Positions 3,001 through 59,254 of a stretch of DNA of 64,000 nucleotides are shown here, piece by piece. Location: contig NC_052158.1 in NCBI RefSeq assembly GCF_902713615.1, positions 39,361,729 through 39,425,728 on the forward strand, in the 5' to 3' direction. The first letter of the stretch is position 1. Every line of letters begins with the position of its first letter. This DNA comes from Scyliorhinus canicula. Lineage: Eukaryota. Made by a program: the position numbers and the translations under genes. The notes beneath the pieces are model-generated. The model did no database searches, was not told where the DNA came from, and was given only the letters and a program-made list of their open reading frames with translations.

Positions 3001-3080
3001 GTTAGTGACAGACCGAGTGTGTCCCAGGTTGCTGTTCCAGGTTAGTAACAGACCGGGTGTGTCCCAGGTTACTGTTGCAG
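1..3080 (+). repeat. 40-bp minisatellite (GGTTAGTGATAGACCGGGTGTGTCCCAGGTTACTGTTCCA), ~77 units, upstream of gene 1 alpha1 exon (probably intron 1); runs off the window edge
   Basis: Direct 40-bp periodicity; reverse-complement array at 59255-62625. Confidence 0.98.
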
Positions 3081-3439
3081 GTTGGTGATATTCTGTTTGA
3101 CACTCTAACCCCTGGATTATGTCCCAGAATCTCCCCCGTGTCCACACTGACTCCATCGGGTATCTGAGTGACTGATTCTGTGTTTACTCCTGTTCTGAGA
3201 GGCTGCAGCATCTAATTGTGACCCAGTTTAATCTGATTCTGTTTCAATATCAGACAGGATTCTGACATTGTGATAAAGTGGTGGATTATTGGACATTGTC
3301 ACAGTGTGGATGTGCCGCACTTTGATCAGGTTCTGGGTGTTTATTAACCTTTCACATTAAAATTGTTTAATCTATAACCAGAAATCCATGATAAACTGAT
3401 CAGTTTTAGCAGCGTCTGATGATGGGAGTGACAGTTCAC

Positions 3440-3770
3440 AGCTGGGATTTTCTAATTGGACAGATTCTCTGTGTTGGAGCCAAAACTTCCCAGCCGGAAA
3501 ATCCCGGTCATCCTGAGAGCCGTATGGATACCAAATGTTCCCGCTGTTTCTCTCCACCCAGATACTGCCAGTCCTGCTGTGTTTCCAGAAGTTTCTGTTT
3601 CTAACTCAGGATTACGGCCTCTGCACAATACCACTTTTAACTCTCGTCATTCAGTTATTTTACAGACACATTGACAGTGATCTTCACTGTATTTGGGATA
3701 TTCCTGAGATTTCTGGTATTATTCTGGTTCGTGAAGAACAGCCACATTATTCTGATGATCCGATTGTTGT
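3440..3770 (+). pseudogene. Degenerate class I promoter/leader/alpha1-start relic
   Basis: kB-like GGGATTTTCT (3444) and GGAAAATCCC (3496), ATTGG (3455); ATG 3535 MFPLFLS..LCF resembles gene 2 leader MFLILFSISLCF but has no good GT donor; ttttacag acceptor at 3665 then DTLTVIFTVFGI / frameshift / PEISGIILVREEQPHYSD aligning to the alpha1 start. Confidence 0.5.
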
Positions 3771-3804: not shown

Positions 3805-4065
3805 ACACCAACATACACACTGTGATATACACAGCAGTCTCTGGGATTGAAGATTTTCCTGAGGTGATCAGCATTGCAATGGTCAATGGTGTCCAAATAG
3901 GTTACAGGGACAGTAATATCCATCGCTGTATTCCCAGACAGCAGTTCATGGCTGATTATTTCGATATGACACACTGGGACTATATTACAGATCTGGTGAT
4001 GAAGGATTCAAATCGAGTGAAGGAAAATCTGGATACGATATTGAAGAACACAAACCAGACACACG
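3805..4065 (+). CDS. Non-classical MHC class I gene 1, alpha1 exon (87 codons)
   Basis: tttacag / G-gtaag, phase 1; DTNIHTVIYTAVSGIEDFPEV...HWD...NTNQTH with conserved W60, D37-S38, P47-R48 and N86 NQT glycosylation site. Confidence 0.95.
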
Positions 4066-4129: not shown

Positions 4130-7100
4130 TTCAGCCCATCTCCCAGCACTGACCCCTGGGACACGGCACTCAGTCCATCTCCCAGGACTGACCCCTGGAA
4201 CACTGCACTCAGTCCCCCAGCACTGACCCCTGGGACACTGCACTCAGTCCCCCTGCACTGACCCCTGGGACACTGCACTCAGTCCATCTCCCAGGACTGA
4301 CCCCTGGGACACTGCACTCAGTCCATCTCCCAGGACTGACCCCTGGGACACTGCACTCAGTCCCCCAGCACTGACCCCTGGGACACTGCACTCAGTCCCC
4401 CAGCACTGACCCCTGGGACACTGCACTCAGTCCATCTCCCAGGACTGACCCCTGGGACACTGCACTCAGTCCATCTCCCAGGACTGACCCCTGGGACACT
4501 GCACTCAGTCCCCCAGCACTGACCCCTGGGACACTGCACTCAGTCCATCTCCCAGCACTGACCCCTGGGAAACTGTACTCAGTCCATCCACCAGCACTGA
4601 CCGCTGGGACACTGCACTCAGTCCCCCAGCACTCAACCCTGGGACACTGCACTCAGTCCCCCAGCACTGACCCCTGGGACACTGCATTCAGTCCATCTCC
4701 CAGCACTGACCCCTGGGACACTGCACTCAATCCATCTCCCAGCACTGACCCCTGGGACACTGCACTCAGTCCATTTCCCAGCACTGACCCCTGGGACACT
4801 GCACTCAGTCCACCAGCCCTGACCCCTGGGACACTGCACTCAGTCCCCCAGCACTGACCCCTGGGACACTGCACTCAGTCCCCCAGCACTGACCCCTGGG
4901 ACACTGCACTCAGTCCCCCAGCACTGACCCCTGAGACACTGCACTCAGTCCATCCCCCAGCACTGACCCCTGGGACACTGCACTCAGTCCCCCAGCACTG
5001 ACCCCTGGGACACTGCACTCAGTCCCCCAGCACTGACCCCTGGGACACTGCACTCAGTCCCCCAGCACTGACCCCTGAGACACTGCACTCAGTCCATCCC
5101 CCAGCACTGACCCCTGGGACACTGCACTCAGTCCCCCAGCACTGACCCCTGGGACACTGCACTCAGTCCATCACCCAGCACTGCCCCCTGGGACACTGCA
5201 CTCAGTCCCCCAGCAATGACCCCTGGGACACTGCACTCAGTCCCCCAGCACTGACCACTGGGGCACTGCACTCATTCCCTCAGCACTGACCCCTGGGACA
5301 CTGCACTCAGTCCATCTCCCAGCACTGACCCCTGGGACACTGCACTCTGTCCCCCAGCACTGACCCCTGGGACACTGCACTCAGTCCATCCCCAGCACTG
5401 ACCCCTGGGACACTGCACTCAGTCCCCCAGCACTGACCCCTGGGACACTGCACTCAGTCCCCCAGCACTGACCCCTGGGACACTGCACTCAGTCCCCCAG
5501 CACTGACCCCTGGGACACTGCACTCAGTCCCCCAGCACTGACCCCTGGGACACTGCACTCAGTCCTCCCAGCACTGACCCCTGGGACACTGCACTCAGTC
5601 CCCCAGCACTGACCCCTGGGACACTGCACTCAGTCCTCCCAGCACTGACCCCTGGGACACTGCACTCAGTCCCCCAGCACTGACCCCTGGGACACTGCAC
5701 TCAGTCCATCCCCAGCACTGACCCCTGGGACACTGCACTCAGTCCCCCAGCACTGACCCCTGGGACACTGCACTCAGTCCTCCCAGCACTGACCCCTGGG
5801 ACACTGCACTCAGTCCCCCAGCACTGACCCCTGGGACACTGCACTCAGTCCCCCAGCACTGACCCCTGGGACACTGCACTCAGTCCCCCCAGCACTGACC
5901 CCTGGGACACTGCACTCAGTCCATCCCCAGCACTGACCCCTGGGACACTGCACTCAGTCCATCCCAGCACTGACCCCTGGGACACTGCACTCAGTCCCCC
6001 AGCACTGACCCCTGGGACACTGCACTCAGTCCCCCAGCACTGACCCCTGGGACACTGCACTCAGTCCCCCAGCACTGACCCCTGGGACACTGCACTCAGT
6101 CCCCCAGCACTGACCCCTGGGACACTGCACTCAGTCCCCCAGCACTGACCCCTGGGACACTGCACTCAGTCCCCCAGCACTGACCCCTGGGACACTGCAC
6201 TCAGTCCCCCAGCACTGACCCCTGGGACACTGCACTCAGTCCCCCAGCACTGACCCCTGGGACACTGCACTCAGTCCCCCAGCACTGACCCCTGGGACAC
6301 TGCACTCAGTCCCCCAGCACTGACCCCTGGGACACTGCACTCAGTCCCCCAGCACTGACCCCTGGGACACTGCACTCAGTCCCCCAGCACTGACCCCTGG
6401 GACACTGCACTCAGTCCCCCAGCACTGACCCCTGGGACACTGCACTCAGTCCCCCAGCACTGACCCCTGGGACACTGCACTCAGTCCCCCAGCACTGACC
6501 CCTGGGACACTGCACTCAGTCCCCCAGCACTGACCCCTGGGACACTGCACTCAGTCCCCCAGCACTGACCCCTGGGACACTGCACTCAGTCCCCCAGCAC
6601 TGACCCCTGGGACACTGCACTCAGTCCCCCAGCACTGACCCCTGGGACACTGCACTCAGTCCCCCCAGCACTGACCCCTGGGACACTGCACTCAGTCCCC
6701 CAGCACTGACCCCTGGGACACTGCACTCAGTCTCCCCAGCACTGACCCCTGGGACACTGCACTCAGTCCCCCAGCACTGACCCCTGGGACACTGCACTCA
6801 GTCCATCCCAGCACTGACCCCTGGGACACTGCACTCAGTCCCCCAGCACTGACCCCTGGGACACTGCACTCAGTCCCCCAGCACTGACCCCTGGGACACT
6901 GCACTCAGTCCTCCCAGCACTGACCCCTGAGGACACTGCACTCATGTCCCCCAGCACTGACCCCTGGGACACTGCACTCAGTCCCCCAGCACTGACCCCT
7001 GGGACACTGCACTCAGTCCCCCAGCACTGACCCCTGGGACACTGCACTCAGTCCCCCAGCACTGACCCCTGGGACACTGCACTCAGTCCCCCAGCACTGA

Positions 7101-9272
7101 CCCCTGGGACACTGCACTCAGTCCCCCAGCACTGACCCCTGGGACACTGCACTCAGTCCCCCAGCACTGACCCCTGGGACACTGCACTCAGTCCCCCAGC
7201 ACTGACCCCTGGGACACTGCACTCAGTCCCCCAGCACTGACCCCTGGGACACTGCACTCAGTCCCCCAGCACTGACCCCTGGGACACTGCACTCAGTCCC
7301 CCAGCACTGACCCCTGGGACACTGCACTCAGTCCCCCCAGCACTGACCCCTGGGACACTGCACTCAGTCCCCCAGCACTGACCCCTGGGACACTGCACTC
7401 AGTCCCCCAGCACTGACCCCTGGGACACTGCACTCAGTCCCCCAGCACTGACCCCTGGGACACTGCACTCAGTCCCCCAGCACTGACCCCTGGGACACTG
7501 CACTCAGTCCCCCAGCACTGACCCCTGGGACACTGCACTCAGTCCCCCAGCACTGACCCCTGGGACACTGCACTCAGTCCCCCAGCACTGACCCCAGGGA
7601 CACTGCACTCAGTCCCCCAGCACTGACCCCTGGGACACTGCACTCAGTCCCCCAGCACTGACCCCTGGGACACTGCACTCAGTCCATCTCCCAGCACTGA
7701 CCCCTGGGACACTGCACTAAGTCCATCCCCCAGCACTGACCCTCTGGGACACTGCACTCAGTCCTTCTCCCAGCACTGACCCCTGGGACACTGCACTCAG
7801 TCCATCTCCCAGCACTGACCCCTGGGACAATGCACTCAGTCCCCCAGCACTGACCCCTGGGACACTGCACTCAGTCCCCCAGCACTGACCCCTGGGACAC
7901 TGCACAGTCCCCCAGCACTGACCCCTGGGACACTGCATTCTGTCCATCCCCCAGCACTGACCCCTGGGACACTGCACTCAGTCCCCCAGCACTGACCCCT
8001 GGGATACTGCATTCAGTCCATCCACCAGCACTGACCCCTGGGACACTGCACTCAGTCCATCCACCAGCACTGACCCTTGGGACACTGCACTCAGTCCATC
8101 CCCCAGCACTGACCCCTGGGACACTGCACTCAGTCCATCCACCAGCACTGACCCTTGGGACACTGCACTCAGTCCATCCCCCAGCACTGACCCCTGGGAC
8201 ACTGCATTCAGTCTATCTCCCAGCACTGACCCCTGGGACACTGCACTCAGTCCCCCAGCACTGACCCCTGGGACACTGCACTCAGTCCCCCAGCACTGAC
8301 CCCTGGGACACTGCACTCAGTCCACCAGCCCTGACCCCTGGGACACTGCACTCAGTCCCCCAGCACTGACCCCTGGGACACTGCACTCAGTCCCCCAGCA
8401 CTGACCCCTGGGACACTGCACAGTCTCCCAGCACTGACCCCTGGGACACTGCACTCAGTCCATCTCCCAGCACTGACCCCTGGGACACTGCACTCAGTCC
8501 CCCAGCACTGACCCCTGGGACACTGCACAGTCTCCCAGCACTGACCCCTGGGACACTGCATTCAGTCTATCTCCCAGCACTGACCCCTGGGACACTGCAC
8601 TCAGTCCGCCAGCACTGACCCCTGGGACACTGCACTCAGTCCCCCAGCACTGACCCCTGGGACACTGCACTCAGTCCATCCCCCAGCACTGACCCCTGGG
8701 TCACTGCACTCAGTCCATCCGCCAGCACTGACCCCTGGGACACTGCACTCAGTCCCCCAGCACTGACCCCTGGGACATTGCACTCAGTCCATCTCCCAGC
8801 ACTGACCCCTGGGTCAATGCATTCAGTCTCCCAGCACTGACCCCTGGGACACTGCACTCAGTCCCCCAGCACTGACCCCTGGGACACTGCACACAGCCCC
8901 CAGCACTGACCCCTGGGACACTGCACTCTGTCCCCCAGCACTGACCCCTGGGACACTGCACTCACCCCCCCAGCACTGACCCCTGGGACACTGCACTCAG
9001 TCCATCCCCCAGCACTGACCCCTGGGACACAGCACTCAGTCCCCCAGCACTGACCCCTGGGACACTGCATTCAATCCATCTCCCAGCACTGACCCCTGGG
9101 ACACTGCACTCAGTCCCCCAGCACTGACCCCTGGGACACTGCACTCAGTCCCCCAGCACTGACCCCTGGGACACTGCACTCAGTCCCCCAGCACTGACCC
9201 CTGGGACACTGCACTCAGTCCCCCAGCACTGACCCCTGGGACACTGCACTCAGTCCCCCCGCACTGACCCCT
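4130..9272 (+). repeat. 35/39-bp minisatellite (CCCAGCACTGACCCCTGGGACACTGCACTCAGTCC), ~5.1 kb, intron 2 of gene 1
   Basis: Direct periodicity; nearly pure 35-mer core ~6000-7680, variant 39-mers at both flanks. Confidence 0.97.
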
Positions 9273-11624: not shown

Positions 11625-11930
11625 ATGACTTACACGAGCAGAACGGAGGAGATTGTTCATCCTCTTTCATTAGTGGATGTCTGTACTCTAATAGAGTGCA
11701 TTGGCACTGACGCGCCCTACCATCCCCTCCCCTACTGGATTAATGACCTTGTTGGCGGGTCTTCGCCCTGACGCGGGTAGAGGAGTTCCCAGTGGGTCTC
11801 TACAATGCTCAGAAGGCATGAGGGAGGCGTCGCTAAATTTGGGGGCAGCATGTTCCTCCCATTGCCAGCCGCAATGTTCCAGCAGCTTCCTCTCCCATAG
11901 GGAGAGAGCTCTGAGCGGGAGCACCATTTC
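11625..11930 (-). mobile_element. Decayed Myb/SANT-like ORF of the same Harbinger element (convergent to the transposase)
   Basis: AAPKFSDASL...GRRP...RVSA..., then across stops KRMNNLLRSAR followed by gtaag. Confidence 0.7.
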
Positions 11931-12194
11931 AATATGGCGTGAGGTTTACTGAAGGCCTCAGATGATGATGGGCAGGAGAAGCTGAGCGGGCCCACAAGTG
12001 ATCCATGCGGGCCCACATGGATGAATAATTAATGAGGTGGCAATGGGATCATACAGCAGGAAAAGTGGCTGAAGGGTAAAATATCCTTTGTGAAATCTGG
12101 GATGTTTCAGACACCTTCCCCTCTGATCAGAACGTTTGTGATTGTCTATTAACTATTCCGTATTGATTATTGATCCCTGTTTGGTCACTGTCAG

Positions 12195-12470
12195 GAATCC
12201 ATATTCTTCAATGGATGTGGTCTGTCGAGATCACTGAAGACGGCTCCATGAGGAGGTCGATGAGGTTTGGATTTGATGGAAAGGATTATATTAGTTTGGA
12301 GCCAGACAGAATGAGATGGGTCGCATCCAATCACATCGCAGTGAAGACTAAAGAGAAATGGGATTCGGATCAATCCTGGAACAAGCACTGGAAAACATAT
12401 CTGGAAGAAGTTCATGTTCTGCATTTAAATGAATATTTACAAGCTGGAAAGGAATATTTTGGACAGAAAG
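12195..12470 (+). CDS. Class I gene 1, alpha2 exon (92 codons), no cysteines
   Basis: tcag / G-gtatt; GIHILQWMWSVEI..FDGKDYISL..TKEKW..YLEEVHVLHLNEYLQAGK; 276 nt, frame preserved. Confidence 0.96.
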
Positions 12471-12586
12471 GTATTGATTTGAGTTTTGATCCATGTTCTG
12501 ATCTAACTTCACTGATCTATCAAACCGTTCTCCCATTCCATTCAGTGTCTGTCTATTGTTTGTGTTTTCACCCTTTCCCATTACAG

Positions 12587-12865
12587 TTCAGCCTGAAGTC
12601 TTCATCTCCAGAAGTGAGGCCAATAGTCAGTACAAGCCGCTCACTCTCTCCTGCCTGGTTACTGGGTTTTATCCTGTAGACATCGAGGTGACCTGGCTAA
12701 GGAATGGAGAGGTAATGTCTGAGACACAATCCTCGGGGCTTCGACCGAACCACGATGGGAGCCATCAGATCCAGAAAGAGATTGAAATAAATGCTGGGGA
12801 TGAGGATCAATACTCCTGTCAAATTGAACACAGCAGCCTGGCAGAGCCCAAGCTCCATCAGTGGG
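12587..12865 (+). CDS. Class I gene 1, alpha3 (Ig C1) exon
   Basis: ttacag / G-gtaag; LSCLVTGFYPVDIEVTW..RPNHDGSHQ..YSCQIEHSSL; C-W-C core intact. Confidence 0.97.
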
Positions 12866-13080
12866 GTAAGGAACAGGACTGGATATGTGTGTGTGTGTGA
12901 TTATGTATGTGCATGCATCTGTGTGTGTGTGTGTTCGTTTACATGCAATATATGCAATATATACAGTCTATTCAGTCTGTTTTACTGTCAATGAGATAAT
13001 GGATTATTTTGACCTCAATTCCATTCATGAGCCTGAGGAATGAAAACAGGAACCGATCGTCAAGCCGACCTTCCCAGCGA

Positions 13081-13338
13081 GTTCATAGAATCCCTACAGT
13101 GCAGAAACAGGCCATTCAGCCCATCATGTCTACACTGACTCTACTGAGGCTCGCTCCCCATCCCTGTGATCGCACCCGGACGTTGGGCACTAAGGGGCAA
13201 TTTAGCAGGGCAAATCCACCTAACCTGACCATCTTTGGACTGTGGAAGAGCAAACTCCACACAGTCACTCAAGGCTGGAATTAAACTCGGGTCCCTGGCT
13301 CTGTGAGGGAGCAGTGCTAACCACTGTGCCACCGTGCC
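13081..13338 (-). mobile_element. HE1/V-SINE-type tRNA-derived SINE
   Basis: Reverse strand GGCACGGTGGCACAGTGGTTAGCAC A-box head, CCAAAGATG..GTTAGGTGGATT core, GGGATTCTATG tail. Confidence 0.8.
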
Positions 13339-13937
13339 ATCTGAGTTCAGCTAATTCTTCTCTGTGTCTGGAACTCAATCTCTGGACATTTGTGAATCTT
13401 TTCTTTGAGCTGGATTCTCTCACTTATTCTATGTGTTGACCATGGTGGCTTCACTGCAGTCGGTTAGGACTAAGTTCTGCTGTTGGATTGTACCAAGTGT
13501 TTCTTTTGAAGCATTTGCTCTGTTTATCTGTCATTTTTCTCATTATCAGCTCAGCCCAGTTTCCTGTGGTCAGTTTATTCCTCATCCCTTTGAAGTTTGA
13601 TGTGAAAACCATCAGTGATGCTGCCTCCTGGGCCGTACAATGTAACCCTGGAGATTGAGCAAGGACAGGACACAGAGACATTGGGGAGAATTAGAACTGA
13701 ACTGGCCGGGAAGGTAACCCACAGGATTGGGAAAACACGGCTTTGACACTCCCATCAATGGGAATCTTCAGTGACTTCACTGGAGAGTGAAATCGGGCGA
13801 ATGTAAAACCAACGTTCCCACCATTCCCATCAATTCCCAATGGGCGGCTTCAGTTCAAATTGTCCCCAATTAACACAGAACTGGGAATGGATCCGGGAAC
13901 AGAGAGGCAAGCCTCATATTATTCACATGTGTTTCAG

Positions 13938-14054
13938 AAATCCCGGTAAACAGTGGGGAACACTCCAATTTTGGAATTATAATCGGATTAGTCATCACTG
14001 CACTGGCTATTTCTGGGATAATCGGAATAATCATCTGGAAAAGACAACGGAGAG
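13938..14054 (+). CDS. Class I gene 1, connecting peptide/transmembrane exon
   Basis: tttcag / G-gtaag; EIPVNSGEHSNFGIIIGLVITALAISGIIGIIIWKRQRR. Confidence 0.93.
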
Positions 14055-14069
14055 GTAAGAATCAGAGAG

Positions 14070-14830
14070 AGGGGAACGTAGAACTGAGAGGACAGAGTGA
14101 GTGTGGGGGAATCTCCAGTACTGGGAGTACAGGACACTGAGAGGGGAGAGAGAGAGAGAGGGGAATGTAGAACTGAGGGGACAGAGTGAGTGTGGGGGAA
14201 TCTCCAGTACTGGGAGTACAGGACACTGAGAGGGGAGAGAGAGAGAGGGGAATGCAGAACTGAGGGCACAGAGTGAGTGTGGGGGAATCCCCAGTACTGG
14301 GAGTACAGGGCACTGAGAGGAGAGTGAGAGAGAGGGGAATGTAGAACTGAGGGGACAGAGTGAGTGTGGGGGAATCCCCAGTACTGGGAGTACAGGACAC
14401 TGAGAGGAGAGTGAGAGAGAGGGGAATGTAGAACTGAGGGGACAGAGTGAGTGTGGGGGGAATCTCCAGTACTGGGAGTACAGGACACTGAGAGGGGAGA
14501 GAGAGGGGAATGTAGAACTGAGGGGACAGAGTGTGTGTGGGGGAATCCCCAGTACTGGGAGGACAGGACACTGAGAGGGGAGAGAGAGGGGAATGTAGAA
14601 CTGAGGGGACAGAGTGAGTGTGGGGGAATCCCCAGTACTGGGAGTACAGGACACTGAGAGGGGGGGAGTGAGAGAGAGAGGGGAATGTAGAACTGAGGGG
14701 ACAGAGTGAGTGTGGGGAAATCCCCAGTACTGGGAGTACAGGGACACTGAGAGGGGAGAGAGAGGGGAATGTAGAACTGAGGGGACAGAGTGAGTGTGGG
14801 GGAATCTCCAGTACTGGGAGTACAGGACAC
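14070..14830 (+). repeat. ~85-bp G-rich minisatellite (~9 units) after the TM exon, with kB-like sites
   Basis: Unit GAGAGGGGAATGTAGAACTGAGGGGACAGAGTGAGTGTGGGGGAATCCCCAGTACTGGGAGTACAGGACACT; same array in gene 2. Confidence 0.95.
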
Positions 14831-15313
14831 TGTGTTGAATGAACTGATTTAATTCCCACTCACAGATACACGTTTAAACACATCTTGTTCCCGGTCTGAT
14901 CTCCCTTTGTGTGATCAGCCCAGACCAGGTCTAATATTGATCATTAAACCCACCACACAGAGACTTCCAGTGTGCAGCATGATGTGAGTAAGCACACAGA
15001 GGCAGCTCCTGCCTAAGGTTACAGAAACGGCACGGGTTGGAGTTTTGATGAAAAGGAGTAGGTGAAGGGTCAAGGAGTACTTTCCCCCAGGAATAGTATG
15101 TTTCCTGGTTATCAGACCCTCAGAAACAGTGCAGGATTGCGGAAGCAGTGGCAGACAAAGACCTCTGCAGGCAGGCAAGCGGGGGAGGGGGCCAGTTTGA
15201 AGGTCTCAAGCAGACTTGAGGGCCTTTGTGAAGGCTGAATTCTAGCAGCAGTCGATGCTATCCCGACGAATCCCAGTGGGGGAAGGTGTCTAGAGGAGCA
15301 TTCCCCATAATTT

Positions 15314-16159
15314 ATGGTGCTCACCCGGAGTGGGGCAAAGGAGAAAGCTGCAGCAGCTCCCCAAGAAGAGCAGGGGAAGAAAGACAAAATGGCGGCCGGC
15401 GGAACACCCGAGGACTGGTGGAAGTGGGCGCAGGAGCAGCAGGCCTCTCTTCTGCGCTGTTTTGCGGAGCTGAAGGCTGAGTTGCTGGACTCTCTGAATG
15501 CAACTACAAACAAGCTGCTTGGGACACAGGCAGCCCAGGAGGTGTCGATTCGGGAGTTACAGCAACATGCCGCTGAGAGGGAGGAGGAGGCCCTGGTCCT
15601 CGTGGGGAAAGTGGAGTTGCACGAGGCACTTCACAAAAAGTGGCAAGACCGCTTGGAGGAGCTGGACGTTCGCACGAGGCGAAAGAATTTGAGGATTCTG
15701 GGCCTGGCGGAGGGGCTGGAGGGGTCGGATCTCCCGTGGTACGTGACCACGATGTTGAGCTCGTTGATGGGAGCGGGGTCCTTCCATTTGCCCCTGGAAC
15801 TTGAGGGAGCTCACAGAGTGCTGGCCAGGAGGCCTAAGGCAAATGAACCCCCGCGGGCGGTGCTGGTGCGGTTCCATCGATTTAGTGACCGGGAGTGTGT
15901 GCTGCGCTGGGCCAAGAAAGAGAGGAGCAGCAAGTGGGAGAATTCGGTGGTGCGAATCTACCAGGACTGGAGTGCGGAGGTGGCAAAGCGGCGGGCCGGG
16001 TTCAACCGGACGAAGGCAGTGCTGCATGCCAAGCAGGTCAGATTTGGAATGCTGCAGCCTGCGCGTCTGTGGGTGACATACAAGGACCGGCGCCACTACT
16101 TCGAGTCCCCGGAGGAGGCATGGGCCTTTGTACAGGCGGAGAAGCTGGACACGAACTAG
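15314..16159 (+). CDS. L1 ORF1p (coiled coil + RRM/CTD), 281 aa, open
   Basis: RRKNLRILGLAEG, LEGAHR, PRAVLVRF, IYQDWS, LQPARLWV motifs. Confidence 0.9.
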   Translation: MVLTRSGAKEKAAAAPQEEQGKKDKMAAGGTPEDWWKWAQEQQASLLRCFAELKAELLDSLNATTNKLLGTQAAQEVSIRELQQHAAEREEEALVLVGKVELHEALHKKWQDRLEELDVRTRRKNLRILGLAEGLEGSDLPWYVTTMLSSLMGAGSFHLPLELEGAHRVLARRPKANEPPRAVLVRFHRFSDRECVLRWAKKERSSKWENSVVRIYQDWSAEVAKRRAGFNRTKAVLHAKQVRFGMLQPARLWVTYKDRRHYFESPEEAWAFVQAEKLDTN

Positions 16160-16790
16160 TGTCTGGGGACACACTATGGCCGTTGCTGTTTTCGCTGTTG
16201 CTGTTTTTCAATTTTGACAGGTGTTATTTTTATGCTGGTTTTCTTTTTGTTCTGTTTCTGGGTGGGTTTGTCTGTTGGGTATGGGTGTGGGGTATGTGGG
16301 GAACGTTGGGGGTATGTGCTTTATATGTTCGCTTCTGTATGGGGCTGGGGGTTGGGGTGAAACTGGATTTTGAGGAGCTGCGTCAGAAGGGTGGGGTGTG
16401 GCAGTATGAAAGCGCGGGCTTTCCTCTGGTTTCCCGCGCTGCGGGGCAGTGGGGGCGGAGCTGGAGGTGGGGGCGTGGCCTTCACTGGTTTTCTTTCCCC
16501 CGCTGAAGCAGTGCCAAGGAGGTGTGGCAAGAGGGGGATGACCCCATGCCGGGAGGAGATGGGTTTTGGCGGGAGCTGCCGGGTCAGCAGAAGTCAGCTG
16601 ACTCACGGAAGTACCATGGAGGGTGCGTCGCGGCTAGGAGGGGTCCTAGGGTGGGGGGGGGATACCGGGTTGCTGCTGGAATGGCCAGAAAGGAGCTGGT
16701 GTGGGCCGGGGGGGGTAGAGGAGAGGCGGTATCGCCATGGGGAACGGGTCAGGCGGGGCGAGCTGGCCTGGGGCGAGCAGTCGATAAGCT

Positions 16791-19700
16791 GTGGCTAGCC
16801 GGCAGGGGAGAGGGACAGGCTGCCCTCTGATCCGGCTGATTACCTGGAACGTGAGGGGGCTGAATGGGCCGGTTAAGAGAACTAGGGTATTTTCTCATCT
16901 GAAGGGGCTGAAGGCGGACGTGGCTATGCTCCAGGAGACCCACTTGAAGGTGGCGGACCAGGTTCACCTGAGGAAGGGATGGGTGGGGCAGGTTTTTCAC
17001 TCAGGATTGGACGCGAAGAACCGGGGGGTGGCGATTCTGGTGGGGAAGAGGGTGGCGTTCGAGTCGGCTGAGGTGGTGTCGGACAAGGAGGGCAGATATA
17101 TTATGGTGAAGGGTAGGCTGCAGGGAGAGAAGGTGGTGCTGGTTAATGTATATGCCCCGAATTGGGATGATGCCGGCTTCATGAGGCGCTTGTTGGGCCG
17201 CATTCCGGACCTGGAGGCAGGGGGCCTGATCATGGGGGGAGACTTTAACACAGTGCTGGATCCCCCACTGGACCGGTCCAGTTCAAGGACGGGTAGGAGA
17301 TCGGCGGCGGCCAAAGTGCTGAGGGGGTTTATGAACCAGATGGGAGGGGTGGATCCCTGGAGGTTTGGGAGGCCGAGAGCGCGGGAGTATTCCTTTTTCT
17401 CCCATGTCCATAGGGTCTATTCCCGAATAGATTTTTTCATCCTGAGCAGGGGATTGATCCCGAAGGTGCAGGATGCAGAGTATTCGGCCATAGCGATTTC
17501 AGACCATGCTCCGCACTGGGTTGATCTGGAGATGGGGGAGGCGCGGGACCAGCGCCCGCTCTGGCGCCTGGATGTGGGGATGCTGGCTGATGAGGAGGTG
17601 TGTAGGAGGGTCCGGGGAAGTATTGAGGGGTATCTTGATACCAACGACACGGGGGAGGTCCGGGTGGGGATGGTCTGGGAGGCTCTGAAAGCAGTGATCC
17701 GGAGGGAGCTGATCTCCATCCGAGCCCATAGGGAAAGGAGGGAGAGGAAGGAGAGGGAGAGACTGGTGGGGGAGCTCCTGGATGTGGACAGGAGATATGC
17801 GGAGGCACCGGAGGAGGGGTTGCTGGGGGAACGGCGTAGTTTGCAGGCCAAATTTGACTTGTTGACCACCAGAAAGGCGGAGACACAGTGGAGGAGGTCG
17901 CAGGGCGCGGTATATGAGTATGGGGAGAAGGCGAGCAGGATGTTGGCGCATCAGCTCCGCAGGCGAGATGCGGCTAGGGAAATTGGTGGAGTGACGGATA
18001 GGGGTGGGAATGTAGTGCAGAAGGGGACTGAAGTAAATGGGGTCTTTAGGGACTTCTACGAGGAACTGTACCGGTCAGAACCTCCGATGGGGAGAGGGGG
18101 GATGGAGAGCTTCATGAACAGGCTATGTTTCCCAAGGGTTCAAGAGGAGCTGGTAGAGGGGCTGGGGGCGCCGATAGAGTTGGAGGAGCTAGTCAGGGGG
18201 ATTGGACAAATGCAGTCAGGGAAGGCGCCGGGGCCGGACGGGTTCCCGGTGGAATTTTATAAAAAGTATGCGGATCTGGTGGGCCCCCTGTTGGTGCGAG
18301 CCTTCAATGAGGCATGGGAGGGGGGGGCTTTGCCCCCGACGATGTCGCGGGCACTGATCTCTCTGATCCTGAAGCGGGATAAGGACCCCTTGCAGTGTGG
18401 ATCATACAGGATTTGTCAAGGGACGGCAGCTCAACACGAATGTGCGGAGACTGCTAAATGTTATTATGATGCCGGCAGTGGGGGGGAGGCGGAGATAGTG
18501 GTGGCGCTGGATGCGGAGAAAGCGTTTGATAGAGTTGAGTGGGGGTACCTGTGGGAGGTGCTGGAGCGGTTCGGATTCGGGGAGGGTTTCATCAAATGGG
18601 TGAGGCTGCTCTACGCGGCTCCGATGGCAAGTGTAGTTACCAATGGAAGGAGATCGGAGTACTTTAGGCTCTACCGTGGGACCAGGCAGGGGTGCCCCCT
18701 GTCCCCCTTGCTCTTTGCACTGGCGATTGAACCTTTGGCTATGGCGTTGAGGGAGTCAGGGAGATGGAGGGGTCTGGTGCGGGGTGGGGAGGAACATCGT
18801 GTATCGCTGTATGCGGACGACCTGCTGTTGTATGTGGCGGATCCAGAAGGGGGAATGCCGGGGGTGATGGAGCTGTTAGCAGAATTTGGGGGCTTCTCGG
18901 GCTATAAGTTAAATTTAGGCAAGAGTGAGGTATTTGTAGTACACCCGGGTGATCAGGAGGAGGGAATTGGGAGACTCCCATTTAAGAGGGCAGTGAAGAG
19001 TTCCAGATACCTGGGGGTGCAGGTGGCCAGGAGTTGGGGGACTCTCCATAAGCTTAATTTTACCAGGCTGGTGGAGCAGATGGAGGAGGAATTTAAAAGG
19101 TGGGACATGGTGCCGCTATCGTTGGCGGGTAGAGTGCAGTCCGTCAAAATTACGGTTCTCCCGAGGTTCTTGTTCCTTTTTCAGTGTTTGCCCATCTTTA
19201 TCCCTAGGGCCTTTTTTAGAAGGGTGACTAGCAGCATCATGAGCTTTGTTTGGGCGCATGGGACCCCGAGGGTGAAGAGGGTCTTCTTGGAGCGGGGTAG
19301 AGATGGGGGGGGGCTGGCGTTACCCAATCTCTCGGGGTATTATTGGGCGGCCAATGTGTCGATGGTGCGCAAGTGGGTAATGGAGGGGGAGGGGGCAGCA
19401 TGGAAACGGATGCAGAGGGCGTCCTGTGAAGATACAAGCCTGGGGCCCTGGTAACGGCGCCGTGGCCGCTCCCTCCTAAGAGGTATACCACGAGTCCGGT
19501 GGTGGCGGCTACCCTCAAGATTTGGGGGCAGTGGAGGCGACATAGGGGAGAAGTGGGGGGCTCGATGGAGGCTCCGTTAAGGGGGAACCATAGGTTCGTC
19601 CCGGGGAACATTGATGGAGGATTTCAGGGTTGGCACAGAGCGGGCATCAGACAGCTGAGGGACCTGTTTATTGATGGGAGGTTTGCGAGTCTGGGGGAGT

Positions 19701-20482
19701 TGGAGGAGAAATTTGGGCTCCCCCGGGGAACATGTTCAGGTATCTGCAGGTAAAGGCATTTGCTAGGCGGCAGCTGGAGGGATTCCCTTTGCTTCCCGCG
19801 AGGGGGGTGAGCGACAGGGTGCTTTCGGGGGTCTGGGTCGGAGAGGGGAAGATATCTGATATCTATAAGGTTATGCAGGAGGCGGAGGAGGCGTCAGTAG
19901 AGGAGCTGAAAGCTAAGTGGGAGGGGGAACTGGGGGAACAGATCGAAGACGGGACATGGGCTGATGCTCTGGAGAGGGTTAATTCTTCCTCCTCGTGTGC
20001 GCGGCTTAGCCTCATCCAATTCAAGGTGCTGCATAGGGCCCACATGACTGGAACGAGGATGAGTAGGTTCTTTGGGGGTGAAGACAGGTGTGTCAGGTGT
20101 TCGGGGAGTCCAGCGAACCATGCCCATATGTTCTGGGCATGCCCGGCACTGGAGGAGTTCTGGAAGGGGGTGGCGAGGACGGTGTCGAGGGTGGTGGGAT
20201 CCAGGGTCAAGCCAGGATGGGGACTCGCGAGTTTTGGGGGTTGGGGTGGAGCCGGGAGTGCAGGAGGCGAAAGAGGCCGGTGTACTGGCCTTTGCGTCCC
20301 TAGTAGCCCGGCGAAGGATCTTGCTACAATGGAAGGATGCGAGGCCCCCAAGCGTGGAGACCTGGATCAATGACATGGCGGGTTTCATTAGGCTAGAGAA
20401 GGTCAAATTCGCCCTGAGAGGGTCGGTACAAGGGTTCTTTAGGCGGTGGCAACCTTTTCTCGACTTTCTGGCTCAACGATAG
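16791..20482 (+). pseudogene. L1 ORF2 (APE endonuclease + reverse transcriptase + C-terminal zinc knuckle), internal deletion and frameshifts
   Basis: TWNVRGLN, GGDFN, SDH; GKAPGPDG, LDAEKAFD, RQGCPLSP, LYADD; RC..C.....HMFWAC; segment between GSYR and FVKG deleted at ~18409; frameshifts near 19450, 19730 and 20220. Confidence 0.9.
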
Positions 20483-20963
20483 GGTACAGGGACAGTAGCA
20501 GCAGCAACCCGGGGGGGAGGGGGAGGGAAAAAGGGGGGGGGGGGGCGGACAATGACTATGTTTGTTTATTTAATTTTAACTTATTTTTAAGTTCTTTTGT
20601 TGTGCATTGGGGTTGGGGGGGGTGGGGGGGATGTGATACATGCGTCGATACGGTCTGGGGGTGTTACAGTTATGGGTTATTTTGTTGCATTTCATTGTCT
20701 GTCGTTATGTTTTATATTTTCTGTAAAAAATTCCAATAAAAATTATATTTTAAAAAAAACCCACCACACACACTCACATCCTCACCTACTGAATATGGAT
20801 GGTATGGAAGAGATCTACAGGATCTCCATAAAGTGGAAGGATGGAGGGGAGTGTGGGAATGAGTATTTCTCACACAATCTCCATTCCCTCACACTTGTTG
20901 TGTTCTCACTCTCTGATAATGGATTATTCCCCATTCTAACTGACATTTATTTTCCTTCTGCAG

Positions 20964-20996
20964 ATTCACCGAGTGGGATCTACACAACAGCTCACA
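20964..20996 (+). CDS. Class I gene 1, cytoplasmic exon (DSPSGIYTTAH)
   Basis: ctgcag / A-gtaagt, 33 nt phase 1; homologous exon at 45804-45836; Tyr in a GxY context like class I tails. Confidence 0.85.
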
Positions 20997-29568: not shown

Positions 29569-29600
29569 CTTCTGATGTCCCTGTTCCGGAAGCTTCTTGA
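29569..29600 (+). CDS. Class I gene 1, last coding exon (TSDVPVPEAS*)
   Basis: ttctcag acceptor, phase 1, TGA then CTCA-gtaagt; identical coding sequence in the inverted copy at 55613-55644. Confidence 0.8.
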
Positions 29601-33845: not shown

Positions 33846-33897
33846 ATGTTCCTGATCCTTTTCTCCATCTCCCTGTGTTTTTCCTGGGTCTCTGCCG
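33846..33897 (+). CDS. Class I gene 2, leader exon (MFLILFSISLCFSWVSA)
   Basis: Hydrophobic 17-aa peptide ending VSA, phase-1 G-gtaagt donor matching the alpha1 acceptor phase. Confidence 0.85.
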
Positions 33898-35025: not shown

Positions 35026-35280
35026 TCACTGACTCACTGACTGTGATCTACACGGCAGTTTCTGGAATTGATGACTTTCCTGAGGTTACTAACGTTGCAA
35101 TAGTGAAGGGAGTTCAAGTTAATTATCATGACACTCACATTCGTCGGATGATCCCCAGGATCATGATGGAATATTTTGATAAGGAATATTGGGAACATCT
35201 CACATTTGTCGTCAATACACGATCAGACATGGCGATAGAGAATCTGAATACTGTAATGAAGATGACAAACCAGACAACCG
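35026..35280 (+). CDS. Class I gene 2, alpha1 exon (85 codons, open)
   Basis: ttttacag / G-gtaag; VTDSLTVIYTAVSGIDDFPEV..EYW..TNQTT. Confidence 0.93.
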
Positions 35281-35559
35281 GTAAGATCAGTGATACAAAT
35301 CTCCCACTGACTGACCTGTTTAATGTGTATGAGCCAGGTACCCAGCCACAGTCACACTGCAGACTGTGACGTTGGAGTGTACGTGTGTGGGACCATGAAT
35401 CAGGGACACATGGATGGTTATTCTAAGATAAAAGCATCTTACTGCGGATGCTGGAATCTGAAACAACTGGACAATCTCAGCAGGTTGTTATGTGAAATAA
35501 GAGGCTGTTTGGCTAGCTAAAGGTAACTTTGTCTTGCTGGGAGCTGGTTAGAGGTGGGG

Positions 35560-42748: not shown

Positions 42749-43025
42749 GAATTCATGTTTTCCAATGGATCCTAATTGGTGAAGTCACTGAAGACGGCTC
42801 CATTCGGAGGTCGATGAGAGTTGGATTTGATGGGAAGGATTATATTAGTTTTGGAGCCAGACACAATGAGATGGGTCGCATCCAATCACATCGCAGTGAA
42901 GACCAAAGAGAAATGGGATTCAGATCAATCCTGGAACAAGTATTGGAAAATAGTTCTAGAAGAAAACATTATCAACGATTTGCTGGTGTATTTAAATGCT
43001 GGAAAGGAATATTTTGGACGGAAAG
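42749..43025 (+). pseudogene. Class I gene 2, alpha2 exon with +1 T (42849-42852), no cysteines
   Basis: 277 nt vs 276 in gene 1; GIHVFQWILIGEV..FDGKDYIS / LEPDTMRW..VLEENIINDLLVYLNAGK. Confidence 0.92.
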
Positions 43026-43136
43026 GTATTGATTTGAGTTTTGATCCATGTTCTGATCTAACTTCACTGATCTATCAACCGTTCTACATTCCATTCGTGT
43101 CTGTCTATTTTTGGTTTTCACCCTTTCCCATTACAG

Positions 43137-43414
43137 TTCAGCCTGAAGTCTTCATCTCCAGAAGTGAGGCCAATAGTCAGTACAAGCCTCACTTCTCTCC
43201 TGCCTGGTTACTGGGTTTTATCCTGTAGACATCGAGGGTGACCTGGCTAAGGAATGGAGAGGTAATGTCTGAGACACAATCCTCTGGGCTCGACCGAACC
43301 ACGATGGGAGCCATCAGATCCAGAAAGAGATTGAAATAAATGCTGGGGATGAGGATCAATACTCCTGTCAAATTGAACACAGCAGCCTGGCAGAGCCCAA
43401 GCTCCATCAGTGGG
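43137..43414 (+). pseudogene. Class I gene 2, alpha3 exon with three local indel lesions (net -1)
   Basis: 278 nt vs 279; otherwise nearly identical to 12587-12865. Confidence 0.92.
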
Positions 43415-44459
43415 GTAGGACACTTGACTGGGTATATATGTGTGTGGTACCAGGATGAGGCCATTCTGCCCTTTGACTCTGTTCCTCCATTCAGTTCACA
43501 TCCTGACTGATCTGTCCCACAGCTCCATTTATCCATTATTGGCTCAATATCTGTCGCTGTCTGATCCAATAAAACTCTCTCTATCTCAGTCTGGAACATG
43601 TCCATTAACCCCCAGCTCCCACAGCCTTTTGGTGGAGAGAGCTCCAGATTTCATTGCCCTTTTTGTGAGGAATTGCTTCCTGATATCACTCCTCAATGTC
43701 CTCAGTCTAATGTGAAGATGATGCTCTCTTATTCCAGATTCCACCACCAGAGAAAATAGTTTCTCAGTATCGACCCTATCGAATCCCTTTATCATTTTAA
43801 CATCTGGATCAGATCCTCCTTCACCCTGTTAAACACAGGGAAATACATGGTCAGCTTTATATAACCTGCCCTCAGAACTGAGAGAATCCAGCTCAATGAA
43901 AAGGCTTCACAAATGCCCAGAGATTAAGTTCCTGACCCTTTGGCCGAGATCTACCGGCTGCATTGCGTCTGAAATGCAGCGTGACGCAACCGGTAGATGC
44001 CGCGGGATATCATCCACGGGATCTACCCTCCACGCTTCAGGAGATCTAAAGCGATCTCGCGGAATGTCACGACCTGAATCCTGCCCATTGTGGGCGGGAT
44101 CACTTTCTAGCAAATCTACCTAATTAGCATGCGAGAGCTAGTCTCACTTTAATATGTGTTCCTGAAATCTAATCCCGTCACCTGGAGACCTCGGGCGAGT
44201 GTTCTTCAATGCTGCTCAATGCTCCGAGCACCAGGCAACACCGGCTAATTGTGCTCTACAGGACTCTGTCCCCATTGGGTAGATCGCACAAGAATTAGCA
44301 GATCTCATGGAGACGGAATGGCCTTTGTGAAGGGGAGCTCTTGTCTGACTCATCTCACTGGCGGATAAGGGAGTGTCTATGGGCTGGTCCAGCTGGAATT
44401 CCAGAAGGTCAGGAATCTTGGTACAAAGAGAAAATCCTGATCCTTTTCCAATGTTTCAG

Positions 44460-44579: not shown

Positions 44580-44599
44580 GTAAGAATCCGAGTGATTGG

Positions 44600-45475
44600 A
44601 ATGTGGAACTGAGGAGACAGTGTGAGTGTGGGGGGGATCCCCAGTACTGGGAGTACAGGACACAGAGGGGAGAGAGAGGGAGAGGGGAATGTAGAACTGA
44701 GGGGACAGAGTGAGTGTGGGGGGATCCCCAGTACTGGGAGTACAGGACACAGAGGGGGAGAGAGGGGGGTAATGTAGAAACTGAGGGGACAGTGAGTGTG
44801 GGGGGATCCCCAGTACGTGGGAGTACAGGACACTAGAGGGGAGAGGGGAATGTAGAACTGAGGGGACAGAGTGAATGTGGGGGGGAATCCCCAGTACTGG
44901 GGGTACAGGACACTGAGAGGGGAGAGAGAGAGAGAGGGGAATGTAGAACTGAGGGGACAGAGTGAGTGTGGGGAATCCCCAGTACTGGGAGGACAGGACA
45001 CAGAAGGGAGAGAGAGGGGAATGTAGAACTGAGGGGACAGAGTGAGTGTGGGGAATCCCCAGTACTGGGAGTACAGGACACTGAGAGGGGAGAGAGAGGG
45101 GAATGTAGAACTGAGGGGACAGAGTGAGTGTGGGGGAATCCCCAGTACTGGGAGTACAGGACACTGAGAAGGGAGAGAGAGGGGAATGTAGAACTGAGGG
45201 GACAGAGTGAGTGTGGGGGAATCCCCAGTACTGGGAGTACAGGACACTGAGAGGGGAGAGAGAGGGGAATGTAGAACTGAGGGGACAGAGTGAGTGTGGT
45301 GGAATCCCCAGTACTGGGAGTACAGGACTCTGGGAGGGGAGAGAGGGGAATGTAGATCTGAGGGGACAGAGTGAGTGTGGGTGGAATCCCCAGTACTGGG
45401 AGTACAGGGCGTTGGGAGGGGAGAGAGGGGAATGTAGATCTGAGGGGACAGAGTGAGTGTGGGGGAATCTCCAGC
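44600..45475 (+). repeat. ~85-bp G-rich minisatellite (~10 units) with kB-like sites, same family as 14070-14830
   Basis: Same unit and same intron position as in gene 1. Confidence 0.95.
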
Positions 45476-55612: not shown

Positions 55613-55644
55613 TCAAGAAGCTTCCGGAACAGGGACATCAGAAG
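55613..55644 (-). CDS. Last coding exon of a third class I paralogue (SDVPVPEAS*)
   Basis: Minus-strand ttctcag acceptor; post-stop gtaagt donor at 55608; coding-identical to 29569-29600. Confidence 0.8.
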
Positions 55645-59240: not shown

Positions 59241-59254
59241 TAAACAGAAGATCT

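What the first reader, a model, noticed from the sequence alone, without database searches (positions are those of the whole stretch)
12195..12470. MHC class I family with no alpha2 disulfide: both C101 and C164 lost in two paralogues
Seen: gene 1 reads HILQWMWSVE (position 101 = V, GTC 12224-12226) and YLEEVHVLHL (164 = H, CAT 12413-12415). Gene 2 has G (42778-42780) and I (42968-42970) at the same sites. Neither alpha2 has any Cys, while gene 1 is otherwise open across six exons with an intact Ig C1 domain. Established: C101-C164 is near-invariant in class I and class I-like molecules and staples the alpha2 helix to the groove floor. Inference: different replacements in the two genes suggest an old, tolerated loss, so a lineage with a reshaped or flexible groove and a non-standard ligand. 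Gene 1 keeps beta2m-contact signatures (Q96, D122, R234-P235, Q242), so a heterodimer is still likely. It may belong to a named shark non-classical lineage (UBA/UCA/UDA/UEA; multigene UEA is my best guess); I cannot assign this without a search.
Basis: partly seen in the sequence, partly recalled or inferred. Interest (0 to 1): 0.82.

Follow-up and report, generated by a model that had tools for sequence, protein, structure and literature searches.

The report
Shark UEA class I lacks disulfide
The missing alpha2 disulfide is real, but it is a 300-million-year-old trait of a whole shark-only family of non-classical MHC class I genes that is already described (UEA), and the gene in question is already annotated and expressed.

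Summary
Observation confirmed. The window is Scyliorhinus canicula chr13 (NC_052158.1:39361729-39425728). Gene 1 is RefSeq LOC119976115 (XP_038672218.1/19.1). My seven-exon model reproduces both isoforms exactly. PDB alignments put Val at C101 and His at C164. RNA contigs from three studies cover the exon and show the alpha1-alpha2 and alpha2-alpha3 splices.

This is a lineage trait, not a quirk of two paralogues. About 12 alpha2 exons on chr13 and about 95 proteins from 14 shark species never have Cys at 101. In 68 aligned members, 101 is Val in 65. Position 164 is hypervariable (L, F, Y, S, G and others) and still Cys in 5. All 13 outgroup class I proteins keep both cysteines. C101 was lost once, on the stem branch. 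C164 then changed at least 19 times.

Gene 2 is broken by four 1-bp indels in alpha2 and alpha3, so its G/I replacements carry little weight.

Position (between hsd17b8 and b2m, marked "MHC-Ib" in Verissimo 2023), high copy number and shark-only distribution fit the published UEA lineage. I could not read the UEA paper, so I cannot say whether the Cys loss was stated there.

AlphaFold2 gives a canonical class I fold (pLDDT 92.8). A beta2m complex model passes (0.92 against a best control of 0.02).

Interest is moderate; the lineage and gene are already known.

The parts
3805..4065 (+). Gene 1 exon 2 (alpha1). The peptide N-terminus and 84 anchors are changed (Y7->V, Y59->H, 84->N). The N-glycosylation motif NQT is kept. 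There is a single free Cys (TGT 3927-3929) at the HLA-45 equivalent.
   Evidence: The ORF, AG/GT splice sites and exact match to XP_038672218.1 are. The last 30 nt of this exon appear as the loose end joined to 12195 in RNA contigs of X1, X3 and X8.
4142..9272 (.). A 35-bp satellite array (about 142 copies) inside intron 2. The paralogues carry the same array in the same intron.
   Evidence: Tandem Repeats Finder; blastn against paralogue loci L027 and L029.
12195..12470 (+). Gene 1 exon 3 (alpha2), the finding itself. Val at 101 (GTC 12224-12226), His at 164 (CAT 12413-12415), no Cys in the domain. T143, K146, W147, Y159 and Y171 are kept.
   Evidence: RNA contigs match with zero differences in X1 and X3. 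Pairwise dN/dS against paralogues is 0.22-0.78.
12587..12865 (+). Gene 1 exon 4 (alpha3), an Ig C1-set domain with both Ig cysteines.
   Evidence: Pfam C1-set at E 2.7e-18. The splice joint 12470|12587 (GT..AG) is seen in X1, X3 and X8. Exact model.
13938..14054 (+). Gene 1 exon 5 (connecting peptide and transmembrane segment). It is skipped in RefSeq isoform X2.
   Evidence: The joint 12865|13938 (GT..AG) is seen in run X1. The model reproduces P0304 with this exon and P0200 without it.
20964..20996 (+). Gene 1 exon 6 (cytoplasmic, DSPSGIYTTAH).
   Evidence: Exact peptide match and AG/GT sites.
29569..29600 (+). Gene 1 exon 7, coding part (..SDVPVPEAS plus stop).
   Evidence: Exact peptide match. 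The spliced CDS equals XP_038672218.1.
33846..33897 (+). Gene 2 (LOC119976119) leader exon, MFLILFSISLCFSWVSA, with a Y-box-like CTGATTGG upstream.
   Evidence: tblastn with shark orthologues; sequence; 100% match to P0247 residues 1-17.
35028..35282 (+). Gene 2 alpha1 exon, 54% identical to gene 1 alpha1, with a 2-residue deletion.
42749..43027 (+). Gene 2 alpha2 exon: Gly at 101, Ile at 164 in the original frame, and a 1-bp insertion (extra T near 42852) that shifts the frame.
   Evidence: DNA alignment A1. The RefSeq product P0247 reads out of frame.
43145..43422 (+). Gene 2 alpha3 exon with three 1-bp indels (-1, +1, -1).
   Evidence: DNA alignment A1; tblastn shows stops and frame changes.

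Best explanation
Shown. Gene 1 is an intact, transcribed and correctly spliced member of a shark-specific, multicopy, MHC-linked non-classical class I lineage. Map position, copy number and distribution identify it as the published UEA lineage. The whole lineage lacks the alpha2 C101-C164 disulfide.

Inferred order of events. Cys101 was replaced by Val once, in the lineage ancestor before crown sharks diverged, and has stayed Val under purifying selection. Cys164 lost its partner and became a free position on the alpha2 helix. It has since been replaced many times, mostly by bulky hydrophobic residues (Leu, Phe, Tyr). A few members still carry it unpaired.

Inferred mechanism. The covalent staple between the alpha2 helix and the groove floor is replaced by hydrophobic packing of residue 164 on Val101. 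This lets the platform fold without oxidative bond formation and makes 164 one of the residues that differ between paralogues.

Inferred function. The heavy chain still pairs with beta2-microglobulin and reaches the membrane; a TM-less isoform is also predicted. The alpha1-side peptide anchors are lost (Y7, Y59, 84) while T143, K146 and W147 are kept. The ligand is therefore probably not a standard peptide, and is more likely hydrophobic or bound only at its C-terminal end. Gene 2 is a decayed copy.
For: Identity of the locus:
- The spliced model equals XP_038672218.1 and XP_038672219.1.
- LOC119976115 and LOC119976119 are listed as MHC-Ib between hsd17b8 and B2M in the supplement of PMC10751288. 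[quoted passage not shown]

Expression: depth is confined to exons, GT..AG joints are seen for alpha2-alpha3 in three studies and for alpha3-TM in one, and the alpha1 exon end joins at 12195.

The trait is lineage-wide:
- All chr13 paralogue alpha2 exons lack both Cys, while other class I lineages in the same genome keep them.
- About 95 proteins from 14 shark species never have Cys at 101.
- Among 68 aligned members, 101 is V in 65, I in 2 and A in 1. Position 164 is L in 23, F in 18, Y in 7, C in 5, S in 5 and G in 4. All 13 outgroups have C and C.

History on the tree: the family is one clade (SH-aLRT 100). There is one C-to-non-C change at 101 and at least 19 state changes at 164.

Constraint: pairwise alpha2 dN/dS is 0.22-0.78.

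No substitute disulfide: 19 of 68 members have no Cys in alpha1+alpha2 and 38 have exactly one.

Fold: AlphaFold2 pLDDT 92.8 and pTM 0.83. TM is 0.92 to chicken BF2 and 0.87 to shark UAA.

Beta2m: the complex score is 0.92, the best of 3 controls 0.02, the runs agree in 100% of contacts and the partner pLDDT is 92. In calibration this mark was reached by 51 of 78 solved complexes and 2 of 108 mismatched pairs.

Anchor residues are read from the alignments.
Against: - No sequence named UEA was in any database I could search, and the UEA paper (PMC8454915) is not held. The lineage name therefore rests on map position, copy number and taxon range.
- Hydrophobic packing of 164 on 101 is inferred from residue types only. 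I could not measure distances in the model, and a model says nothing about stability or dynamics.
- The beta2m pass may come from the model's memory of solved class I complexes.
- The Fitch set at the family root for 164 is ambiguous (L, C or F) without the outgroup. Re-gain of Cys164 is therefore not excluded.
- Gene 1 keeps T143, K146, W147, Y159 and Y171, so a peptide ligand bound at its C-terminus is not excluded.
- No protein-level or ligand data exist here.
Confidence: 0.78

Rival explanations
1. The family is drifting toward loss of function. The missing cysteines would reflect relaxed constraint in a set of dying or dead class Ib genes rather than a working disulfide-free design.
For: Gene 2 is frameshifted. 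L013 and the chr1 copy carry stops. L002 and L003 have no alpha1 exon. Position 164 changes very often.
Against: Gene 1 has seven intact exons with canonical splice sites. Spliced RNA is found in three studies. Pairwise alpha2 dN/dS is below 1 in all 28 pairs. Val101 is conserved in 65 of 68 members from 13 species that diverged hundreds of millions of years ago. One sublineage has orthologues one-to-one in many species.
Confidence: 0.05
2. The disulfide has been moved rather than lost. Another Cys pair, or an intermolecular bond through the free Cys at the 45-equivalent position, would take over the stabilising role (for example a covalent homodimer or a covalent ligand adduct).
For: Gene 1 has one Cys in alpha1 (TGT 3927-3929). 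Cys occurs at that column in 26 of 68 members and in 0 of 13 outgroups. Two paralogues (L005, L006) also carry a Cys in the alpha2 loop.
Against: 19 of 68 members have no Cys at all in alpha1+alpha2 and 38 have exactly one. No intradomain pair is therefore conserved. The monomer model is confident without any such bond.
Confidence: 0.1
3. The clade is not UEA but another shark class Ib lineage, for example one related to the dogfish UCA, or an unnamed one.
For: No named UEA sequence could be compared. Gene 1 keeps five of the eight classical anchor residues checked, while the UEA abstract as I recall it stresses loss of the nine invariant residues.
Against: PMC10751288 places only UDA (single copy), UEA (multicopy) and the unpublished UFA in this cluster. 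This family is the multicopy one, with about 12 loci from 39.28 to 41.1 Mb. Hits come from sharks only, including whale shark and bamboo sharks.
Confidence: 0.08
4. The missing cysteines are an assembly or base-calling artefact.
For: The neighbouring gene 2 shows four single-base indels, partly in homopolymers. These could in principle be long-read errors.
Against: Independent RNA contigs match gene 1 exactly across both codons. The same residues occur in 13 other species' assemblies.
Confidence: 0.01

Closest known systems
Shark non-classical class I lineage UEA (Almeida et al. 2021, J Immunol 207:824; mapped in Verissimo et al. 2023, PMC10751288)
   Same: Both are multicopy, MHC-linked next to beta2m and brd2, found in sharks only, carry altered peptide-terminus anchors and split into several sublineages. 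Gene 1 and gene 2 are listed as MHC-Ib in that paper's catshark table.
   Different: No difference was demonstrated. I could not compare with a named UEA sequence or read whether the paper mentions the missing alpha2 cysteines.
Classical class I (shark UAA, PDB 6lup; chicken BF2)
   Same: Same domain order, predicted fold (TM 0.87-0.93), N86 glycosylation motif, Q96, T143, K146, W147, alpha3 Ig disulfide and predicted beta2m interface.
   Different: There is no C101-C164 bond. G100 is also replaced. Y7, Y59 and residue 84 are changed. The family is multicopy rather than one polymorphic locus.
The alpha1-type membrane-distal MHC domains (class I alpha1 and class II alpha1), which lost the ancestral C11-C74 pair (PMC8236899)
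   Same: They are a precedent that the homologous helix-to-sheet disulfide of an MHC groove domain can be lost without loss of fold.
   Different: That paper argues the lost pair sits over an Ig-domain contact that compensates. It says the alpha2/beta1-type pair is well conserved because that half of the platform has no such support. UEA has lost exactly that conserved pair.
Class I molecules that present hydrophobic ligands (chicken YF1*7.1, CD1, the unpublished shark UFA/UGA)
   Same: Non-classical class I with changed pocket residues. YF1*7.1 is among the close structural matches (TM 0.93).
   Different: YF1*7.1 aligns with Cys at both alpha2 sites; for CD1 I recall the disulfide being kept (UFA/UGA are unpublished, so unknown). 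No ligand is known for UEA, and the resemblance in function is conjecture.

Membership tests
MHC class I heavy chain | alpha1-alpha2 platform (Pfam MHC_I) followed by an Ig C1-set alpha3 domain, a TM segment and a short tail | tested here: met
   Pfam MHC_I at E 7.7e-19 and C1-set at E 2.7e-18. The exon model equals the RefSeq protein. The AlphaFold2 model has TM 0.92 to solved class I chains.
MHC class I heavy chain | Intradomain alpha2 disulfide C101-C164 | tested here: not met
   V101 and H164 by gap-free alignment to PDB chains. Absent in the whole clade. This is a near-universal feature rather than a formal criterion, so membership stands.
MHC class I heavy chain | Association with beta2-microglobulin | tested here: inconclusive
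   The complex model scores 0.92 against a best control of 0.02, with 100% contact agreement and partner pLDDT 92. This mark was reached by 51 of 78 solved complexes and 2 of 108 mismatched pairs. The model supports binding but may draw on memory of solved class I complexes. No experiment was done.
Shark UEA lineage | Multicopy family in the MHC-Ib cluster flanked by hsd17b8/rxrb and b2m/brd2 | tested here: met
   About 12 alpha2 exons lie on chr13 from 39.28 to 41.1 Mb. The published catshark gene table marks these loci as MHC-Ib between hsd17b8 (34.9 Mb) and B2M (41.36 Mb). The main text names UEA as the multicopy lineage there.
Shark UEA lineage | Present in sharks (Selachii), not detected in rays or chimaeras | tested here: met
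   All clade members returned by two searches come from 14 shark species of six orders. Absence from rays and chimaeras is only absence among the hits.
Shark UEA lineage | Loss of the invariant peptide-terminus-binding residues and a hydrophobic groove (as I recall the abstract) | tested here: inconclusive
   Y7 is V in 44 of 68 members. Y159 is H, Q or Y. Y171 is Y in 46 and R in 16 of 68. K146 (60 of 68) and W147 (68 of 68) are conserved, and T143 is kept in gene 1. The loss is partial.
Shark UEA lineage | Clusters with named UEA reference sequences (nurse shark Gici-UEA) in a tree | not testable with these tools
   No protein carrying that name was returned. The paper is not held.

The most novel reading that the evidence does not exclude
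The two-step history may be undescribed. Cys101 became Val once at the origin of the lineage. The orphaned Cys164 then decayed at least 19 times into a hypervariable, mostly hydrophobic groove residue, and 5 of 68 members still carry it unpaired. Position 164, together with a free Cys at the 45-equivalent floor position in 26 of 68 members, may be a main determinant of what each paralogue binds. The lineage would then be a natural class I platform that folds without the oxidative step that classical class I needs.
Probability: 0.3. Interest if true: 0.55.

Novelty: already known. Interest (0 to 1): 0.38.

Why it matters
The C101-C164 bond is one of the most conserved features of MHC groove domains. 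From my own knowledge of classical class I, mutating either cysteine impairs folding and surface expression; I did not check this here. An old, expanded and expressed shark lineage that does without the bond shows that the bond is dispensable given the right packing. It offers a natural system for asking what the bond contributes to stability, groove dynamics and chaperone dependence, and what such molecules bind. For this scan the practical result is that the finding describes an annotated gene of a published lineage. It is useful as a lineage signature (Val101) and not as a discovery.

Tried and rejected
- Leader exon. A signal-peptide-like ORF inside the window (MMGVTVHSWDFLIGQILCVGA, 3419-3506) is not conserved in paralogues and was rejected. 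The true leader is 24.6 kb upstream of alpha1 (C13:39340844-39340895).
- The conserved block upstream of alpha1 (around window 3250-3340) has no usable reading frame and was left unexplained.
- Pfam MHC_I did not detect the alpha1 exons of this lineage genome-wide. They were found with gene 1's own alpha1 as the query.
- L008's 296-aa open frame is an artefact of an N gap, so I did not use it as a query.
- Reading the UEA and UDA papers failed by PMC id, DOI and PubMed id.
- Lexical searches for statements about class I lineages without alpha2 cysteines gave nothing specific.
- No protein named UEA turned up in cluster look-ups.
- The self-blastn against paralogue loci was swamped by the intronic satellite.
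- I could not extract coordinates from the AlphaFold2 model, so no 101-164 distance was measured.

Full report
**What is at the coordinates**

Window 12195-12470 is a phase-1 exon bounded by AG and GT. Its translation has no cysteine. It matches Pfam MHC_I positions 93-177 (E 7.7e-19), and the next exon is an Ig C1-set domain (E 2.7e-18).

phmmer alignments to solved class I chains are gap-free around both sites. MWSVE aligns with MYGCE or MFGCD, and LEEVHVLHL aligns with LEETCVLWL or LEETCIEWL. This puts Val (GTC 12224-12226) at C101 and His (CAT 12413-12415) at C164.

**Which genome and which gene**

The window is C13:39361729-39425728 of a 4.22-Gb assembly. The contig length, 163,470,629, is that of Scyliorhinus canicula chromosome 13, to which RefSeq proteins of this family are assigned.

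Protein P0200 (XP_038672219.1) and its cluster mate P0304 (XP_038672218.1) match gene 1 exactly. A seven-exon model reproduces both isoforms residue for residue, and all its splice sites are canonical:
- leader at C13:39340844-39340895, outside the window
- alpha1 3805-4065
- alpha2 12195-12470
- alpha3 12587-12865
- TM 13938-14054
- cytoplasmic 20964-20996
- cytoplasmic plus stop 29569-29600

The X2 isoform skips the TM exon. Intron 2 is 8.1 kb and holds a 5.1-kb array of a 35-bp satellite, which the paralogues share.

**Expression**

Contigs of four public runs were laid on 11900-14060. Depth is confined to the exons.
- The joint 12470|12587 (GT..AG) appears in X1, X3 and X8, which belong to three studies.
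- The joint 12865|13938 appears in X1.
- In X1, X3 and X8 the sequence joined upstream of 12195 is the last 30 nt of gene 1's own alpha1 exon.
- X1 and X3 contigs cover both codons in question with no differences.

The runs are labelled RNA only as a guess. The intron-free coverage and the canonical joints show that they are RNA.

**Gene 2**

Gene 2 (LOC119976119) has a leader (33846-33897) and an alpha1 exon (35028-35282). Aligned with gene 1, its alpha2 exon has a 1-bp insertion and its alpha3 exon has three 1-bp indels. RefSeq's 197-aa product (P0247) runs out of frame after the insertion.

Its Gly and Ile at the two sites (GGT, ATT) are therefore read from a broken gene. They are weak evidence for a 'tolerated' replacement. 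I could not check the indels against DNA reads.

**The trait belongs to a whole lineage**

Searching the genome with the alpha2 exon finds about 12 related exons on chr13 between 39.28 and 41.1 Mb, at 60-80% identity. All lack both cysteines. The more distant class I exons on the same chromosome all keep GC..C.

An exhaustive HMMER search and two word-indexed searches returned about 95 related proteins from 14 shark species:
- Scyliorhinus canicula and S. torazame
- Mustelus asterias
- Carcharodon carcharias
- Cetorhinus maximus
- Chiloscyllium plagiosum and C. punctatum
- Hemiscyllium ocellatum
- Stegostoma tigrinum
- Rhincodon typus
- Heterodontus francisci
- Heptranchias perlo
- Pristiophorus japonicus

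None of these proteins has Cys at 101. In an alignment of 68 full-length members and 13 outgroups:

| Position | 68 family members | 13 outgroups |
|---|---|---|
| 101 | V 65, I 2, A 1 | C 13 |
| 164 | L 23, F 18, Y 7, C 5, S 5, G 4, rest scattered | C 13 |

**History of the two sites**

The tree was built with the two trait columns removed. The family is one clade (SH-aLRT 100). The C versus non-C state at 101 changes once, on the stem. Position 164 needs at least 19 state changes. Its bottom-up Fitch set at the family root is {L, C, F}, which the all-Cys outgroup resolves in favour of Cys.

Members that still have Cys164 are scattered. They include two at the basal polytomy and one from Heptranchias. 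Many replacements (F, Y, S, G, W) are single-step neighbours of a TGY codon.

My reading is that C101V happened once and was kept, and that C164 was then released from constraint. That order is an inference. Re-gain of Cys164 is not excluded.

**Is the domain still under constraint?**

Nei-Gojobori dN/dS for all 28 pairs of catshark alpha2 exons is 0.22-0.78. The codon for Val101 is GTC or GTT throughout.

No replacement disulfide exists. Of the 68 members, 19 have no Cys in alpha1+alpha2 and 38 have exactly one.

Gene 1's single Cys (TGT 3927-3929) aligns with HLA residue 45 on the groove floor. Cys occupies that column in 26 of 68 members and in none of the outgroups.

**Structure and partner**

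AlphaFold2, run with the family alignment, gives pLDDT 92.8 and pTM 0.83, with the normal strand and helix order. Foldseek places the model on chicken BF2 (TM 0.92, rmsd about 2 A), chicken YF1*7.1 (TM 0.93) and shark UAA 6lup (TM 0.87).

The catshark beta2m exon 2 was taken from the annotated B2M locus and modelled with the gene 1 ectodomain.
- The score is 0.92 and the best of three controls is 0.02.
- The runs agree in 100% of contacts, and the partner pLDDT is 92.
- In calibration this mark was reached by 51 of 78 solved complexes and 2 of 108 mismatched pairs.

Class I-beta2m complexes are abundantly solved, so this pass shows likeness and not binding.

**Anchor residues**

By the alignments, gene 1 has Y7->V, Y59->H and 84->N, but keeps T143, K146, W147, Y159 and Y171.

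**Comparison with what is known**

Verissimo et al. 2023 (PMC10751288) list LOC119976115 and LOC119976119 as MHC-Ib genes of catshark chr13, between hsd17b8 and B2M/BRD2. [quoted passage not shown] A 2025 review calls UEA one of two expanded shark class Ib families.

I could not confirm this against a named sequence, and I could not read Almeida et al. 2021.

Wu et al. 2021 (PMC8236899) describe the homologous cysteine pair of the alpha2/beta1-type domain as well conserved, because that half of the platform lacks support from an Ig domain. They note that the pair of the alpha1-type domain was lost repeatedly. UEA has lost the pair that is normally kept, and that is the real point of interest.

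**Verdict**

The loss is old and tolerated, the UEA guess fits, and a beta2m heterodimer is plausible.

The argument from 'two different replacements' does not hold, a reshaped groove is not shown, and the novelty is low. The genes are annotated, the lineage is published, and its alignments necessarily show the missing cysteines. What may be new is the ordered, two-step history and the hypervariability of position 164.

Noticed in passing
window 3927-3929: Gene 1 has a single free Cys in alpha1, at the equivalent of HLA residue 45 on the B-pocket floor. Cys occupies this column in 26 of 68 family proteins and in 0 of 13 outgroups. It could be a ligand-facing thiol.
   Followed up: partly
G000:C1:23583318-23583685 (L045, L021): alpha1 and alpha2 of this lineage lie contiguous on chromosome 1, without the multi-kb intron and with stop codons. 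This looks like a processed pseudogene outside the MHC.
   Followed up: no
window 12314, 12413, 12420: An RNA contig of run X8 differs from gene 1 by A>C, C>T (His164 to Tyr) and T>A (Leu166 to Gln). It is either an allele of gene 1 or an unassembled paralogue, and either way it again varies at position 164.
   Followed up: no
window 1-3090 and 59253-62625; 55616-55642 (-): A 40-bp satellite at the window start recurs inverted near its end. The last coding exon (SDVPVPEAS) also has a minus-strand copy at 55642-55616, next to an N gap at 58498-58997. The window seems to end in an inverted partial gene copy.
   Followed up: no
window 14064-14832 and 44598-45474: An 83-87-bp minisatellite starts 10 nt after the TM exon donor in both genes (9-11 copies).
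   Followed up: no
G000:C13:39538250-39538522 (-) and 39555115-39555387 (+) (L002, L003): Two alpha2 exons encoding identical protein sequences lie head to head 16.6 kb apart, and no alpha1 exon was found for either. The one flank examined (9.5 kb upstream of the L002 exon, L027) is mostly the 35-bp satellite. This is either a truncated inverted duplication or an assembly collapse.
   Followed up: partly
window 12865 to 20964 (isoform X2): RefSeq predicts TM-less isoforms, with alpha3 spliced straight to the cytoplasmic exon, at two loci of the family (P0200, P0191). A Cetorhinus isoform (P0005) instead skips alpha3. Only the alpha3-to-TM joint was seen in the RNA contigs laid here.
   Followed up: partly
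window 3250-3340 and paralogue loci L035-L044: A block of about 90 nt roughly 0.5 kb upstream of gene 1's alpha1 exon is conserved among paralogues. It contains ATTGG and TGACAT motifs and has no usable reading frame. It lies inside intron 1, and its role is unknown.
   Followed up: no
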